This document shows, piece by piece, positions 34,066 through 42,327 of a DNA stretch of 64,000 bases. The notes under the pieces were generated by a model. The model was not told the origin of the DNA. It ran no database searches and saw only the letters and a program-made list of their open reading frames with translations. Both the position numbers and the translations under genes were made by a program. The stretch is from NCBI RefSeq assembly GCF_003704095.1, contig NW_020845567.1, forward strand, positions 248,001 through 312,000, read 5' to 3'. The DNA is from Pocillopora damicornis. Lineage: Eukaryota. Position 1 is the first letter of the stretch. Each line of letters starts with the position of its first letter.

Positions 34066-37000
34066 CTAGTAAAAGCCTTCGCTCCAACTCTCGCCATCAT
34101 TGGATCTCGCTGGGCTCACTCCACGAGGCGTTGGAATTCTCCTTGAAAAACAAAAGAAAAAAACACAACAAGTAAATCAGAAAGAGATAGATATGATAGA
34201 TATATGATATAAGAGGCTAGACAAACTTAGGCAAACAAGCACACCATCTTTTGCTTATAACTTGTGGAGATATGTGAAGTAGAGTATTGGAGGAGCACAT
34301 TTTTTGATACCTCGGTGCTGCTAGCTGACCAGCTCTGGGTGTAACCGGTTTCCTTGGTGACGGTGAGTGTGGAGGTGTGTTTGGTCGCCTAATGGCAGTA
34401 ACCTGGCCTGGAACAGGTCTTGTGTGAGTCGGAGTTTGAGGTAAACTGCGCCTGCGTACTTCAACATCCTCCGCTACCCGTGATCGGGCTGATGGCTCAC
34501 GTCTCCTGACCTGATTTGGTTCACGTCTTCTCACTTGAGAAGGAGAGAAGCAAATCATAATAAGAAACGACTAAAGATATCTTACCTATTGAAGTTAAAA
34601 TTACACCACTTGCCACCCTGAATGAACTTGCGGGGAATGAATGCAACATCCAACAACACTGGGCCGGATTGTTCAAAGCTGGGTTAAGATAACCCAGTGT
34701 TAATGTGAAATTTGATTTCAAGTTTTAATTCTTTTTGTCTCGATTTGATTATTATATGCTCTAAAAGAATAAAGAAATATTCTGAAAAAGGCACTTGAAT
34801 AGAGAAATAAGGAAACCTGGTTTAAGATTTAACCCTGGGTTGGCGCTAATCGGCCTTCGAACAACTGAGCCCTGATCTTCAGTTGTCATGACAATCACAT
34901 CTGGATTAATGTAGACTAGTGCTAAACGTTCGTCGGAAGGCTCAGCAAAGAGCGAGCTCTTAAAAAAAAAGTTTCACCAAGGAATTCACAAATGAACTCC
35001 CTCTTGATTTGTGTCGAGCTGTTTATACCTGCTGTTACTATGGGAACATCATCGTCTGGTCTCATGTCTTCTCTCTGCCAAGAATCTGGTGACAAATTGA
35101 GAACAAACCCTGACTGACGACTCAAACACAAGTAATTAATGGTACCTGAACGGTATTGGTACTTTTTGATCTAAAATCACATGAAGGATTGCACGAAATG
35201 AAGTTCAACTACCACTTTACCATATCAACTTTGAAACTGCACAGTTTTATCCCCTAAAGAGGCCTGTTTTTTTCTTCTTTTTTTTTTTAATACAAAAGGA
35301 ATGTTTTGGTGACATAAGTTGCAAAATTCGGTACAGTGGAAATTTGTCGTTCATATTCCTGAAATGTGAATAGTTACTTTAAAAATGCCATTAAATTCAC
35401 TTGCTTGCTTTGTTTGTAGAGTAGATTAGGAGCCACCACACAGTATCAGAAAAAATTCAGTAGGTTCTGAGCCTACTTCACAGCTTTTCTAATTTAGCAT
35501 TATGATGAAACTAAAATTATGCTGATTGCAATACAACGATTAAAAGGGGTTACAGGCACAAAGCCAAAATTAAGGGTGTTTTCAAGGGGATGCAGCATTG
35601 CTTTGGTGACCTAATAGGTTACACAATGGTAACAACTTGCCAACCAATAATTGGGTGTTTCATATACCATACTATTTTCAAAAAAAACAAATGAAACATG
35701 CAGATAGAAACAAAAACCGTTCTCAACTGCATATATAACAAGACATAATTGAATACTAACTATTGTAATCATCTTGATGATGACTGTTGGTTGCTGGAAC
35801 ACGTCTCCTGGGTTGAACATATTCCTCATCACTATCAGCTTGCATATATGTTTGGATTGCTCCTACATAGCCAAATTAAAAAAAAAACCCTTAGAGTGTG
35901 TTCAGATTCAACTTTGGCAGGGAAAGTTTGACAACTTACCTGTTGCCATTGGTTGTTTGGCCTGTGGAGGTGCACCTCTTCTGCGCACTAATCCTGTACA
36001 AAAAATAGTATTCAAAACATTAGCTATTGATACATGTAGATCACCAAAAAAAAGAACACAATACAACACAGCTAAAAGGTCATTACTAAAATTAAAAGGC
36101 CTACAGAATCATTGAAATACCACATTAGATGCTGTCTAAAATGATTACTGATACAATAAGCAGTGATATTGTGAATGATCACAACAATGTTTGTGGCAAG
36201 AAAACAAAACTGTCTTTGTACAGTGAATTTTTTAAGTTCCACTACTTACTTGAATCATAAACTGAATTCAAAAGTTAGGCTAGGCTTTAAACACTATTAA
36301 AATATAATTTCCAATAGACCCTCACAATTTTACTACAAGTACTGACCTTTTACCACTAAGTCTTCTTTATCTTGTGATACTTGGCCTCGTCTCTGTGGAA
36401 CTACACCTCCAGTATCATTGTCATCAATTTGCAGTGAAGCAGTATCTTATTTGTTGGAATAGTCGGAATGATAAAAGTTAATTGGTGATGTTGCAGTCCA
36501 TCAACATAAGTTACCAAATGTGACAATTTCACATAGTCACTTACTCTTCAATGATATCATCAAAACAGATGTTTTGGCTGTGCACTGCCAATTTGAAGAG
36601 ACACGTGTTTGCTACATTAAACAGTAAATTGAAGTGAAATGTCTTGATTCTATCATTTCAACCCAAATCATATACGCTGACATTTCAGGACCTCTCTATC
36701 AAAGTTAGTAATCTCACACTCTCTTAACTCACCCAATGAAGCTCTGGGCTGTGGGGATTCACCTCTCCTTCTCAATGGACCTACCACAAATAAAAATATA
36801 AACAAATGATATTCTTTGTGCTGTACACCTCCCTACTCTAAATTTAAAAATGCATCATGGATAACAACTGCAAAAATCAGATTTTTTCATGCACATGTTA
36901 AGCAGGGCTACTGAAAATGTTCAACCAGATTGCTGAGAAGCTATATTTTTCTCTGCACAAGTTTCAAAATTAGAGATCTTGTTTTTTTTCCTAGTTTTAT

Positions 37001-40000: not shown

Positions 40001-42327
40001 TGTTACAGAACAAACCTCGTACAGTCAAGTCAGAATCATCCTGGTTTGCAGTTGCCATAGGAACACGTCTCCTTGGTTTTACTTGAACATGTTCATCATC
40101 ATTGTCACTATCATCACTCAGCTGCCCTGTAGTAATTTATTTATACATCAAGAATGACACAAATCAGTTCTTAGGGTGTTTTTTATCATTAAATATGTGA
40201 GCTATAGAATGCATGGACTGAATTTCAAAGAGATTTTATTCAATGACTAGTCTGAATGTAAGTTAGAAAAGCAAGACATTGCTGCAACAAACAAACAAAT
40301 TATACCCAGCTTTGATTACCAAACAAAGTTTTTTTTTCAATTTTAGCCAACACAGGCAGAAACAGGGCTAAATTACAACTACTTACTTCAATAAAATTGA
40401 GTACACCAAGAGCATGGGAACAATGACAAATTTGCTTTTATATATAGTGTACTTGTGATGCTCTAAGCAAAAACCACAATGCTAAGTGACATGCCAATGG
40501 AATGTAGCAGATCAGTGATCCAATGACCAGTTTGAGATCATCCAAATCACTGATCTGATGAATTCCAGAGTGGATTCAATGGATCAATGATCTAAAAAGG
40601 GATTTGCATCAAACAAATGCCACAGATCAGAAATCCTGATCTGGATCATCTCAAAGGAATGCACCCTTAAATAAAATCTACACCTCAAATTGCACAACCA
40701 AGTAACAGTAAAACAATAGTTATTAAAAGAACATACTGTCATCATGAACAGGTTGTTGCTGCACTGAATTGTGATGGGAGTCTACACTGGTATGTGGGGG
40801 AGATCTAGACAATGCCTCTGTAAAACAAACCACACAAACCATGGATACAAAGCACATGTACTTGTATTGTATTAAGTACCTCACACAATGATCTAGGTGA
40901 AACACATATCTGGCAGTTCTCACATTCAATATTGTTGTAGATGTAAATATGTAACATTCAAAATGTTTTTGACAATTTGTCACATTTCCTTGTATATGCT
41001 AGTGGAGACTTTGATGCAATTGGTTTCAATGTACATGTATTTGAATATCATCAATTGGTTAGAACACTCAAGAAAAGTTACACCTGAGTCCATATGTGTT
41101 ATACACAACCAATGTCATTTAAATGATATAAGAAGATGAACCCTTTCACTCTCAAGACCTCTATAGTAATTCTCCTTTCTGTCTGCCACACAATTGTTAC
41201 TCTACTTCAGAGAATTTAAAAATCCAAAAGTTTATATTTTTTAAAATTCTCAGCACTTGTCTTCTTGATATCACATTGATATTATTTGGGACAAATTCTG
41301 AATGTACTGTTTAAGAATGATTTCTCAAATATCAAGAGGAATGACATGTATAATTATCACTTATTATTGATTTAAACTGTATTAGAACCAATACCTTCCT
41401 GTGCTGCAATAGACTCCAATTTTGCCAAAAGAGAGCCTCTTACTTTATTGAGTTCAGGTACATCCAAGTTGTCCTTCAGATACTTATAAGGACTTACTCT
41501 CTTCTGCTCTACAGAGGGTGGATGGCTTGGAGACACATATAACCTAATCAGGTATAAAACAAAAATACAAAACCAAACACAAAACAAAACAATGTAGGGT
41601 TTCTGAGATTTACACTTCCTGCAACCATACAAGTGTTCATGTATGGTACAAGTTTTAATTGTATAATAAGCTTAATTATTCTTGCATTTTGATTGGTTCT
41701 TACTTATGATCTTTTGAGGACAGACGCCGAAATGACGACACCATAAACATCTTGCTTTTTAATCATGTAAAACAAACACACGTAGATTCCACGTTGAGTT
41801 GAATAATGTAAAGGTATTACAAATTACGATAGATTTGGTTGTTTGATCGAATATGACGTCTTCATCTATTGAAACCATCTGTGCTTACCCGAACATGTGA
41901 TTCTGACTGAAGAAAAACTCTACAACTATTATGACAGATTGAAACAGAAAAGCCGCTCACTTGAGAAGTAATGCACTCGTACTGTTTACTGAAAAAACAT
42001 TTCAAAGGAGCTAACTAAGCTTGGATTAGTCCAAGGGTAAGTGATAATGAAATTGTTTGAGAAGCCACCTAGAGTAAAGAAAGCGAAAATCACCAGAGTT
42101 ACCCACCATGTATCCTCATCTTCCTCTACCATAGCGTTCAAGTCCAATAATGGGACATCATCCAAATTTAACTTGACTTTGACCATGTTATCGTCGTTGA
42201 TTCTGTTCGAGGGGACACGCCGACTATCCGTGCTCTTTAGTTGCGCATTTTGTTCTTCAAGCCGTTTCACCATCTCCTGCAGTCGCTTGATGTCTGAGCC
42301 AGCAGATTTTCGCAACTCCGCGCTCAT
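34066..42327 (-). CDS. SLAIN: SLAIN motif-containing microtubule plus-end tracking protein, about 529 aa
   Basis: Exons 42327-42107, 41543-41395, 40817-40737, 40126-40016, 39671-39639, 38969-38838, 38194-38147, 37985-37884, 37073-37020, 36780-36733, 36445-36347, 35993-35940, 35862-35761, 35085-35029, 34533-34311 and 34141-34066 give an open frame of 1590 nt. N-terminal coiled coil DIKRLQEMVKRLEEQNAQLK, then LDDVPLLDL..EDEDTWLYVSP..VSPYKYL..SLLAKLE, and C-terminus DGESWSEGFY* (vertebrate SLAIN ends SWKDGCY). Not assignable to SLAIN1 or SLAIN2. Confidence 0.92.
34662..34871. mobile_element. PIF/Harbinger-like MITE
   Basis: TIRs ggccggattgttcaaag and cttcgaacaactgagcc, with ctg on both flanks (CWG-type 3-bp TSD). 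Internal mirrored gggttaa/ttaaccc motifs. Confidence 0.65.

What the first reader, a model, noticed from the sequence alone, without database searches (positions are those of the whole stretch)
35029..40817. SLAIN centre is an array of duplicated, frame-symmetric mini-exons (acidic A units and GPxRRRG B units)
Seen: twelve consecutive exons are all phase 1-1 with lengths divisible by 3 (81, 111, 33, 132, 48, 102, 54, 48, 99, 54, 102, 57 nt). Ten fall into two repeat classes in the order A-B-A-B-A-B-B-A-B-A. A units: DDSDNDDEHVQVKPRRRVP..QDDSDLTVR, NDSDSDVD..RPQRRVP..QEDSSLVVK, SDDMGDDDGIVPQRRAQVSQDQEDLVVK, IDDNDTGGVVPQRRGQVSQDKEDLVVK, ADSDEEYVQPRRRVP..QDDY. B units: GPVRRRGTPST, GPLKRRGPSPQPRTSL, GPLRRRGAPAQARQPIAA, GPLRRRGESPQPRASL, GLVRRRGAPPQAKQPMAT. 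The triplets 48/102/54 nt and 48/99/54 nt look like a later block duplication, and the following exon adds VRRREP twice and VRRRSLP. Known: vertebrate SLAIN1/2 are +TIP adaptors for ch-TOG, EB, CLIP and CLASP, and I know of no such repeat in them. I also could not find their central ARxQEESLR-type block here. Inference: any subset of these exons can be skipped in frame, giving a combinatorial splicing cassette that could tune the number of basic/acidic modules (microtubule binding, basophilic kinase sites or condensate formation).
Basis: partly seen in the sequence, partly recalled or inferred. Interest (0 to 1): 0.78.

Follow-up and report, generated by a model that had tools for sequence, protein, structure and literature searches.

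The report
Duplicated mini-exon array in coral SLAIN
The middle of a stony-coral gene that looks like the microtubule-tip adaptor SLAIN is built from twelve small frame-preserving exons, ten of them duplicated acidic and basic units; they are transcribed, are shared by all stony corals examined, and are now and then skipped one at a time.

Summary
On the minus strand, 35029-40817 holds twelve consecutive exons of the stated lengths, all phase 1-1. Spliced RNA contigs from four independent studies confirm every GT..AG intron. The spliced 529-residue model lies letter for letter inside a Pocillopora damicornis RefSeq protein. Ten exons fall into acidic A and basic B units in the stated order. 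The array is old. Eight scleractinian homologues share it. In Porites lutea each unit is again one phase 1-1 exon, and Nematostella alternates acidic exons with RRG-type basic exons in the same phase. The two B-A-B triplets are a true duplication, but they group by lineage rather than by position, which suggests homogenisation or re-duplication. The SLAIN identity is probable, not proven. Pfam SLAIN scores below its cut-off, but the N-terminal helix, the RSLP and RRIP sites and the W..G.Y tail match residues shown to work in human SLAIN2. Splicing evidence shows only single-exon cassettes: A3 is skipped in two runs, and other species' annotated isoforms each lack one other mini-exon. It does not show a combinatorial system. 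The function is inferred. I file it as a new variant of a known kind, of moderate interest.

The parts
42107..42327 (-). Exon 1, coding from the ATG at 42327: N-terminal helix and acidic stretch ending in W (codon split with exon 2). The RefSeq model starts 22 codons further upstream.
   Evidence: single copy in the genome; AlphaFold helix with pLDDT 85-89
41395..41543 (-). Exon 2 (149 nt): LYVSP motif and second helix. This is the only part that touches Pfam SLAIN.
   Evidence: the loose end at 40819 in 4 runs reads its 3' end
40737..40817 (-). Exon 3, 81 nt, phase 1-1, not an A or B unit
40016..40126 (-). A1, 111 nt, phase 1-1, acidic unit with PRRRVP core
39639..39671 (-). B1, 33 nt, phase 1-1, basic unit PVRRRG
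38838..38969 (-). A2, 132 nt, phase 1-1, acidic unit with PQRRVP core
38147..38194 (-). B2, 48 nt, phase 1-1; first exon of block 1
37884..37985 (-). A3, 102 nt, phase 1-1; cassette exon, skipped in runs X5 and X6 by the joint 37073|38147
37020..37073 (-). B3, 54 nt, phase 1-1; last exon of block 1
36733..36780 (-). B4, 48 nt, phase 1-1; first exon of block 2 (copy of B2)
36347..36445 (-). A4, 99 nt, phase 1-1; copy of A3 (75% DNA, 77% protein identity)
35940..35993 (-). B5, 54 nt, phase 1-1; copy of B3 (72% DNA identity)
35761..35862 (-). A5, 102 nt, phase 1-1, acidic unit with PRRRVP core. The intron after it is kept in some otherwise spliced contigs.
35029..35085 (-). Exon 14, 57 nt, phase 1-1, acidic, ends in VTA(V). 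Its Montipora counterpart is skipped in isoform X3.
34311..34533 (-). Exon 15, 223 nt: VRRREP twice, VRRRSLP (the invariant RSLP site), Ser/Pro/basic-rich
34066..34141 (-). Exon 16, coding part with stop: RRIP site and the W..G.Y carboxy-terminal tail

Best explanation
This is the central, intrinsically disordered part of the single-copy Pocillopora member of a hexacoral gene family that is most likely the cnidarian counterpart of SLAIN1/2. Shown: twelve transcribed phase 1-1 exons, ten of which arose by tandem exon duplication. They encode alternating acidic A units (an Asp/Ser run, a P-x-R-R-V-P type core, then D-L-V-V-K) and basic B units (P-L-R-R-R-G, then Pro-rich). One unit per exon and the intron phase are conserved in Porites. 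The alternation of acidic exons with RRG-type basic exons is conserved in Nematostella, so the building principle predates the split of corals and sea anemones. The B-A-B block pair has been homogenised or re-duplicated within lineages. Single mini-exons behave as cassette exons. Inferred: the basic cores are extra copies of the family's conserved carboxy-terminal RSLP and RR[IV]P sites, which correspond to the SxIP-like EB-binding sites of human SLAIN2. On this reading the array raises the number of weak EB-, tubulin- or microtubule-binding sites. The acidic Ser/Asp runs and the Ser/Thr-Pro sites would supply charge-based and phosphorylation-based damping. Exon number, set by duplication over evolution and by skipping within a species, would set the valency.
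For: Exons and introns. Identity with a RefSeq product. Same unit order in 8 scleractinians. Exon maps: Porites has 14 consecutive phase 1-1 exons, Nematostella 10, plus a 57-nt cassette exon. Disorder: pLDDT is under 50 with no secondary structure from residue 154 to the end of the RefSeq product, with helices only at 18-57 and 125-150. SLAIN-type features: Pfam PF15301 hits its first 47-81 positions in the window's exon 2 (E 0.09), Montipora (E 3e-4) and Acropora (E 5e-3), always in the same region. RRSLPQ.P, PRR.P.P and W, G, Y at -6, -3 and the last position are invariant in ten hexacoral sequences. The paper on human SLAIN2 reports a coiled coil at 1-43, an otherwise unstructured Ser/Pro/basic-rich protein, RSLP at 560 as the strongest tip-tracking site, and W576, C580 and Y581 as the CLIP CAP-Gly contacts (PMC3115796). 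The last conserved site reads RRIP in Pocillopora and RRVP in Acropora and Montipora, the same core as A1, A2 and A5. Repeating SxIP motifs raises tip affinity (review PMC4834103). Cassette use. Slain2 is reported to carry Esrp-dependent exons that differ between phyla (PMC5703972).
Against: No member reaches the Pfam SLAIN cut-off, and 8 of 10 full-length homologues give no hit at all. No bilaterian SLAIN could be aligned here. No strict [ST]x[IL]P motif and no literal SLAIN stretch are present. B units lack the Ile/Leu-Pro pair that EB binding uses. From my own knowledge, acidic residues near SxIP motifs weaken EB binding. Nearly all assembled Pocillopora transcripts include all units, and two of the four runs show no skipping, so tuning by splicing may be minor. 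No binding or localisation data exist for any cnidarian member.
Confidence: 0.65

Rival explanations
1. The array is a constitutive, passive disordered spacer. Only its length and mixed charge matter, the motifs persist through common descent, and the observed exon skipping is splicing noise without a tuned function.
For: Full-length inclusion dominates the assembled Pocillopora transcripts. No skipping was seen in X1 and X13. Each species' annotated isoform drops a different exon. AlphaFold sees no structure.
Against: The RRG and RRVP cores and D-L-V-V-K are kept across both scleractinian clades while the spacers vary. In sea anemones the same B-like cassette exon is alternative in both Actinia and Nematostella. 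The skipped form has a third to a half of the depth of the included junction in two studies (a rough measure).
Confidence: 0.3
2. The gene is not a SLAIN relative but a nuclear or nucleolar protein with alternating acidic and basic stretches, like Nopp140/dao-5 or SRRM1. The R-rich cores would be nuclear localisation signals and the Ser/Asp runs CK2 sites.
For: NCBI names the Pocillopora products 'serine/arginine repetitive matrix protein 1-like' and the Nematostella products 'nucleolar protein dao-5'. The alternating charge blocks are there. There are 8 S..[DE] sites. Pfam SLAIN is below its cut-off.
Against: No PWI, SRP40 or other domain of those families appears at E up to 10, so those names probably rest on low-complexity similarity. 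The invariant parts are the N-terminal helices, RSLP, RR[IV]P and the W..G.Y end, which fit SLAIN2's mapped functional residues. NCBI names the Acropora, Montipora and Actinia products, and UniRef a Porites lobata product, SLAIN2 or SLAIN2-like.
Confidence: 0.1
3. The two B-A-B blocks arose by separate duplications in several coral lineages, rather than once with later gene conversion.
For: Blocks group by lineage. The tree that holds position 1 together is rejected, p-AU 0.014. Within-species identity runs from 55% (Acropora) to 93% (Oculina). Porites has an extra A-B pair, which shows that duplication goes on.
Against: All eight species have the same unit order. The first B of block 2 carries Glu after RRG (or after RR in Porites) in seven of the eight, all but Acropora, and the first B of block 1 never does. 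Within Acroporidae and within the pocilloporids the blocks do group by position. The blocks are short (72 columns), so most forks are weakly supported.
Confidence: 0.3

Closest known systems
Vertebrate SLAIN1/SLAIN2, +TIP adaptors linking EB, CLIP, CLASP and ch-TOG (PMC3115796)
   Same: Short N-terminal helix or coiled coil, the rest disordered and rich in Ser, Pro and basic residues. An RSLP site, plus a further R-x-[IV]-P site about 24 residues from the end, where human SLAIN2 has RSLP at 560 of 581. Carboxy-terminal W at -6 and an aromatic last residue, with Cys at -2 in Porites and the sea anemones. Weak Pfam SLAIN hits to the start of the profile.
   Different: Below the Pfam cut-off. No literal SLAIN stretch and no strict SxIP. 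The centre is an ordered array of duplicated acidic and basic mini-exons, which the SLAIN2 paper does not describe; it says the protein has no conserved sequence regions beyond the coiled coil. That paper found no counterparts outside vertebrates and tunicates.
Esrp-dependent alternative exons of Slain2 in several animal phyla (PMC5703972)
   Same: In-frame alternative exons in the same gene family, with different exons used in different phyla.
   Different: That paper names the gene only in a list. No cnidarian exon array or repeat is described, and Esrp dependence was not tested here.
Nopp140/dao-5-type proteins with alternating acidic Ser-rich and basic stretches (my own knowledge)
   Same: Regular alternation of acidic Ser/Asp runs, which are CK2-type sites, with Lys/Arg/Pro-rich stretches in a disordered protein.
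   Different: No LisH or SRP40 domain hit. The conserved ends are of SLAIN type. The units are one per exon.
Disordered repeat arrays coded one unit per symmetric exon and differentially spliced, such as the titin PEVK exons (my own knowledge)
   Same: Tandem exon duplication, frame-neutral exons, a disordered product, and unit number varied by duplication and skipping.
   Different: Two unit types of opposite charge alternate here, the array is short, and only single-exon skipping has been seen.

Membership tests
SLAIN (Pfam PF15301; SLAIN1/2) | Score at or above the Pfam gathering cut-off (27 bits) | tested here: not met
   Window exon 2: 12.6 bits. Montipora 20.8 and Acropora 16.8 bits, all on profile positions 1-81. 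Eight other homologues gave no hit. The search of the window's own genome with the family found nothing, which is uninformative for short exons.
SLAIN (Pfam PF15301; SLAIN1/2) | Short N-terminal coiled coil, remainder unstructured and rich in Ser, Pro and basic residues | tested here: met
   AlphaFold with 10 sequences: helix at 18-57 of the RefSeq product (pLDDT 85-89), a second helix at 125-150, and 154-551 under pLDDT 50 without secondary structure. Dimer formation was not testable.
SLAIN (Pfam PF15301; SLAIN1/2) | SxIP-like sites in the carboxy-terminal part, including RSLP | tested here: met
   RRSLPQ.P and PRR[IV]P.P are invariant in 10 hexacoral sequences. RSLP is the strongest tip-tracking site in human SLAIN2. 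EB binding itself was not testable.
SLAIN (Pfam PF15301; SLAIN1/2) | Carboxy-terminal Trp and last-residue Tyr that dock on CLIP CAP-Gly domains (W576, C580, Y581 in human) | tested here: met
   The tails end W-x-x-G-[CF]-Y in all ten. Cys is kept in Porites, Actinia and Nematostella, matching the spacing given in PMC3115796.
SLAIN (Pfam PF15301; SLAIN1/2) | The name-giving SLAIN amino-acid stretch | tested here: not met
   Absent from all seven homologues checked. The paper assigns it no function.
SLAIN (Pfam PF15301; SLAIN1/2) | Binding to EB, ch-TOG, CLIP and CLASP; plus-end tracking | not testable with these tools
   Needs pull-downs and live imaging.
Tandem exon-duplication array | Consecutive exons of one phase class whose products are homologous, one unit per exon | tested here: met
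   12 of 12 exons are phase 1-1. Motif counts against shuffles. A3 against A4 genome-wide, E 6.6e-6. The same layout occurs in Porites and Nematostella.
SRRM1 / Nopp140 (dao-5) type proteins | PWI domain, or LisH and SRP40 C-terminal domains | tested here: not met
   No such Pfam hit at E up to 10 in ten homologues.

The most novel reading that the evidence does not exclude
Hexacorals have turned the SLAIN linker into a valency dial. Each mini-exon would add one weak EB-, tubulin- or microtubule-binding basic site or one acidic, phosphorylatable damper. Cassette splicing, together with retention of the intron after A5 (which would cut off the whole EB/CLIP-binding end), would produce isoforms ranging from strong tip trackers to ch-TOG-sequestering forms like the dominant-negative SLAIN2 N-terminal fragment. 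Gene conversion would keep the units alike.
Probability: 0.15. Interest if true: 0.65.

Novelty: new variant of a known kind. Interest (0 to 1): 0.42.

Why it matters
The founding paper on SLAIN2 found no counterparts outside vertebrates and tunicates. A cnidarian family with the same functional end motifs would push this adaptor back to the common ancestor of cnidarians and bilaterians. It would also show which short motifs are its durable core: the N-terminal helices, RSLP, RR[IV]P and the W..G.Y tail. The array is a clean, datable case of a disordered region built exon by exon from symmetric exons, with signs of homogenisation between copies and with cassette behaviour. That makes it a natural series of valency variants for testing how multivalent basic motifs and acidic spacers set microtubule-tip affinity. 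It is not a new kind of system. The products are already in RefSeq, some under misleading names.

Tried and rejected
- Pfam on single exon translations gave only E 0.09. Pfam on full-length homologues stayed sub-threshold.
- The PDB sequence search found nothing.
- The ESM Atlas listed a mollusc SLAIN2 cluster third at 0.77, a lead only. The N-terminal part alone gave no usable hit.
- The word search with the Actinia N-terminal region found cnidarians only.
- I left the third large protein search unused. A similarity of about 20 bits cannot reach significance in a library of 5.8 billion proteins, so a blank would say nothing.
- Searching the window's own genome with PF15301 returned nothing, and its controls were silent too.
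- Look-ups of the Acropora and the Nematostella X2 products by exact sequence were not on record. Porites and the older Nematostella model worked.
- Introns of the two blocks do not align. Only exon pieces matched, so the duplication is not recent.
- The scan for hidden extra units in the introns found none.
- Literature searches for SLAIN with coral or cnidarian terms found nothing relevant.
- The joined spliced model was never sent to a search tool as typed letters. The identical RefSeq product returned was used instead.
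Full report
**What is there.** The gene lies on the minus strand. Each is bounded by AG and GT. I built a 16-exon model: E1 42107-42327, E2 41395-41543, twelve exons between 40817 and 35029, E15 34311-34533, and E16 34066-34141 including the stop. It reads through without a stop for 529 codons. It enters each of the twelve central exons in phase 1. Their lengths are 81, 111, 33, 132, 48, 102, 54, 48, 99, 54, 102 and 57 nt.

**Transcription.** Public RNA runs hold the stretch. I laid contigs of four runs from four studies on 34930-40920. All eleven internal introns appear as CT..AC joints on the plus strand, each in three or four of the runs. The ends at 40819 and 35029 run on into the sequences of E2 and E15. 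Run X1 is almost identical to the window. The other three differ by a few percent in the introns, so they come from other genotypes or close relatives.

**Identity of the locus.** The spliced model was not sent to any search as joined letters. I searched exon 1 by reference against 1.84 billion representatives. That returned a 526-residue homologue, and a word search with it returned a RefSeq product of Pocillopora damicornis. My model is contained in that product letter for letter from its residue 23. The gene is single copy in the 234-Mb assembly.

**The repeat.**
- The unit motifs occur 4-5 times each, against expectations of 0.0001-0.005 in shuffles.
- A units have net charge -1 to -5 and B units +3 or +4. 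The whole array is near neutral, with 42 basic and 44 acidic residues in 295.
- A3 finds only itself and A4 in the whole genome.
- DNA identity is 75% for A3/A4, 72% for B3/B5 and 69% for B2/B4. The introns do not align. The B-A-B block duplication is therefore real but not recent.
- No extra units hide in the introns.

**Spread and age.** Eight scleractinian homologues share the order A-B-A-B-A-B-B-A-B-A. They include Oculina, Porites, Montipora and Acropora, so both major coral clades are covered. Porites has one extra A-B pair. I mapped two products onto genomic loci.
- Porites lutea has 18 exons. Fourteen consecutive ones are phase 1-1, with one unit per exon.
- Nematostella has 14 exons, ten consecutive in phase 1-1. 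Acidic exons alternate with short exons that begin with a V-x-R-R-G type motif, and the intron sits directly before that motif as in corals.

The building principle therefore predates the split of corals and sea anemones. The specific A and B units are scleractinian.

**History of the two blocks.** In a tree of the B-A-B blocks, the blocks group by lineage, not by position. The tree that holds position 1 together is rejected, p-AU 0.014. Within-species identity of the two blocks runs from 55% (Acropora) to 93% (Oculina). Even so, the first B of block 2 carries Glu after the RRG (or RR in Porites) in seven of the eight species, all but Acropora, and that of block 1 never does. I read this as one old duplication followed by homogenisation in some lineages. 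Repeated duplication is not excluded, and the blocks are short.

**Is it SLAIN?**
- Pfam PF15301 touches only the start of its profile. It always hits the same region (exon 2 and its surroundings) and always stays below the 27-bit cut-off: 12.6, 16.8 and 20.8 bits.
- AlphaFold predicts a confident N-terminal helix, a second helix, and disorder from residue 154 to the end.
- Ten hexacoral sequences keep RRSLPQ.P, PRR[IV]P.P and a W-x-x-G-[CF]-Y end invariant.
- The paper on human SLAIN2 (PMC3115796) reports a coiled coil at 1-43 and an otherwise unstructured Ser/Pro/basic-rich protein. It names RSLP at 560 as the strongest contributor to tip tracking, and W576, C580 and Y581 as contacts with CLIP CAP-Gly domains. 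The match in motif and spacing is good.
- NCBI names the Acropora, Montipora and Actinia products SLAIN2-like. It names the Pocillopora and Nematostella products after SRRM1 and dao-5, but no domain of those families is present.

I put SLAIN kinship at about 0.8. I could not obtain bilaterian SLAIN sequences with these tools, so I could not test whether they have similar units.

**Splicing.**
- In runs X5 and X6, from two studies, a joint links B2 directly to B3 and drops A3. Its depth is roughly a third to a half of the included junction's.
- X1 and X13 show no such contig, which does not prove absence.
- Nine of the 15 listed members of the product's 20-member cluster are assembled 529-residue transcripts with all units.
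- Annotated isoforms in other species each lack exactly one mini-exon: the B4 counterpart (45 nt) in Porites lutea and P. harrisoni, the exon 14 counterpart (42 nt) in Montipora, and a B-like exon of 60 nt in Actinia and 57 nt in Nematostella. These last two are homologous to each other.

Cassette behaviour of single exons is therefore supported. A combinatorial system is not shown.

**Intron retention.** In all four runs, contigs keep the intron after A5. In X5 such a contig is spliced downstream and has high depth, and the normal joint is not listed there. Reading into that intron gives a stop after one codon. The product would lack the RSLP, RRIP and tail modules. I did not follow this further.

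**How it most likely works (inference).** The A cores (P-x-R-R-V-P) have the same core as the family's last conserved site. That site reads RRIP in Pocillopora and RRVP in Acropora and Montipora. The B cores resemble the VRRREP and VRRRSLP motifs of exon 15. The array thus looks like a multiplication of the family's own basic short motifs, set between acidic Ser/Asp runs and Ser/Thr-Pro sites. Repeating SxIP motifs is reported to raise tip affinity (PMC4834103). Mitotic phosphorylation releases human SLAIN2 from EB1 and ch-TOG. My best reading is a multivalent linker regulated by charge and phosphorylation, whose valency changes with exon number. Against it: B units lack the Ile/Leu-Pro pair, there is no strict SxIP, and there are no experimental data.

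**Verdict.** This is a new variant of a known kind and is of moderate interest.

Noticed in passing
window 35086-35760 (intron between A5 and exon 14): RNA contigs in all four runs keep this 675-nt intron. In X5 a 2244-nt contig keeps it while being spliced further downstream, at depth 104, and the normal joint is not listed in that run. Read-through gives a stop after one codon, so the product would lack the RSLP, RRIP and W..G.Y modules. It may be a truncated isoform or a decay substrate.
   Followed up: partly
window 40560-40680 (intron between exon 3 and A1): Contigs of X1, X13 and X6 break off here into unlike sequence (loose ends at 40608-40668), and depth rises in X13. This looks like a dispersed repeat that is also present in other transcripts.
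   Followed up: no
window 42328-42393: The RefSeq model starts at an in-frame ATG 22 codons upstream of the Met that aligns with the start in most other species. Porites models likewise exist with and without a 19-residue extension.
   Followed up: no
window about 35086-35109: The GenBank model pdam_00006049 (P0030) carries 8 extra residues before exon 14, from an upstream acceptor. None of the four RNA runs shows that joint.
   Followed up: partly
L002:12116-12172 (Nematostella) and the Actinia isoform pair P0070/P0029: A B-like exon of 57 or 60 nt that begins PVRRRG is alternative in both sea anemones. This is a cassette exon conserved between two actiniarian families.
   Followed up: partly
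P0023 (Oculina patagonica), residues 254-391: The two B-A-B blocks are 93% identical to each other, far more than in Pocillopora (72%) or Acropora (55%). This points to recent gene conversion or re-duplication.
   Followed up: partly
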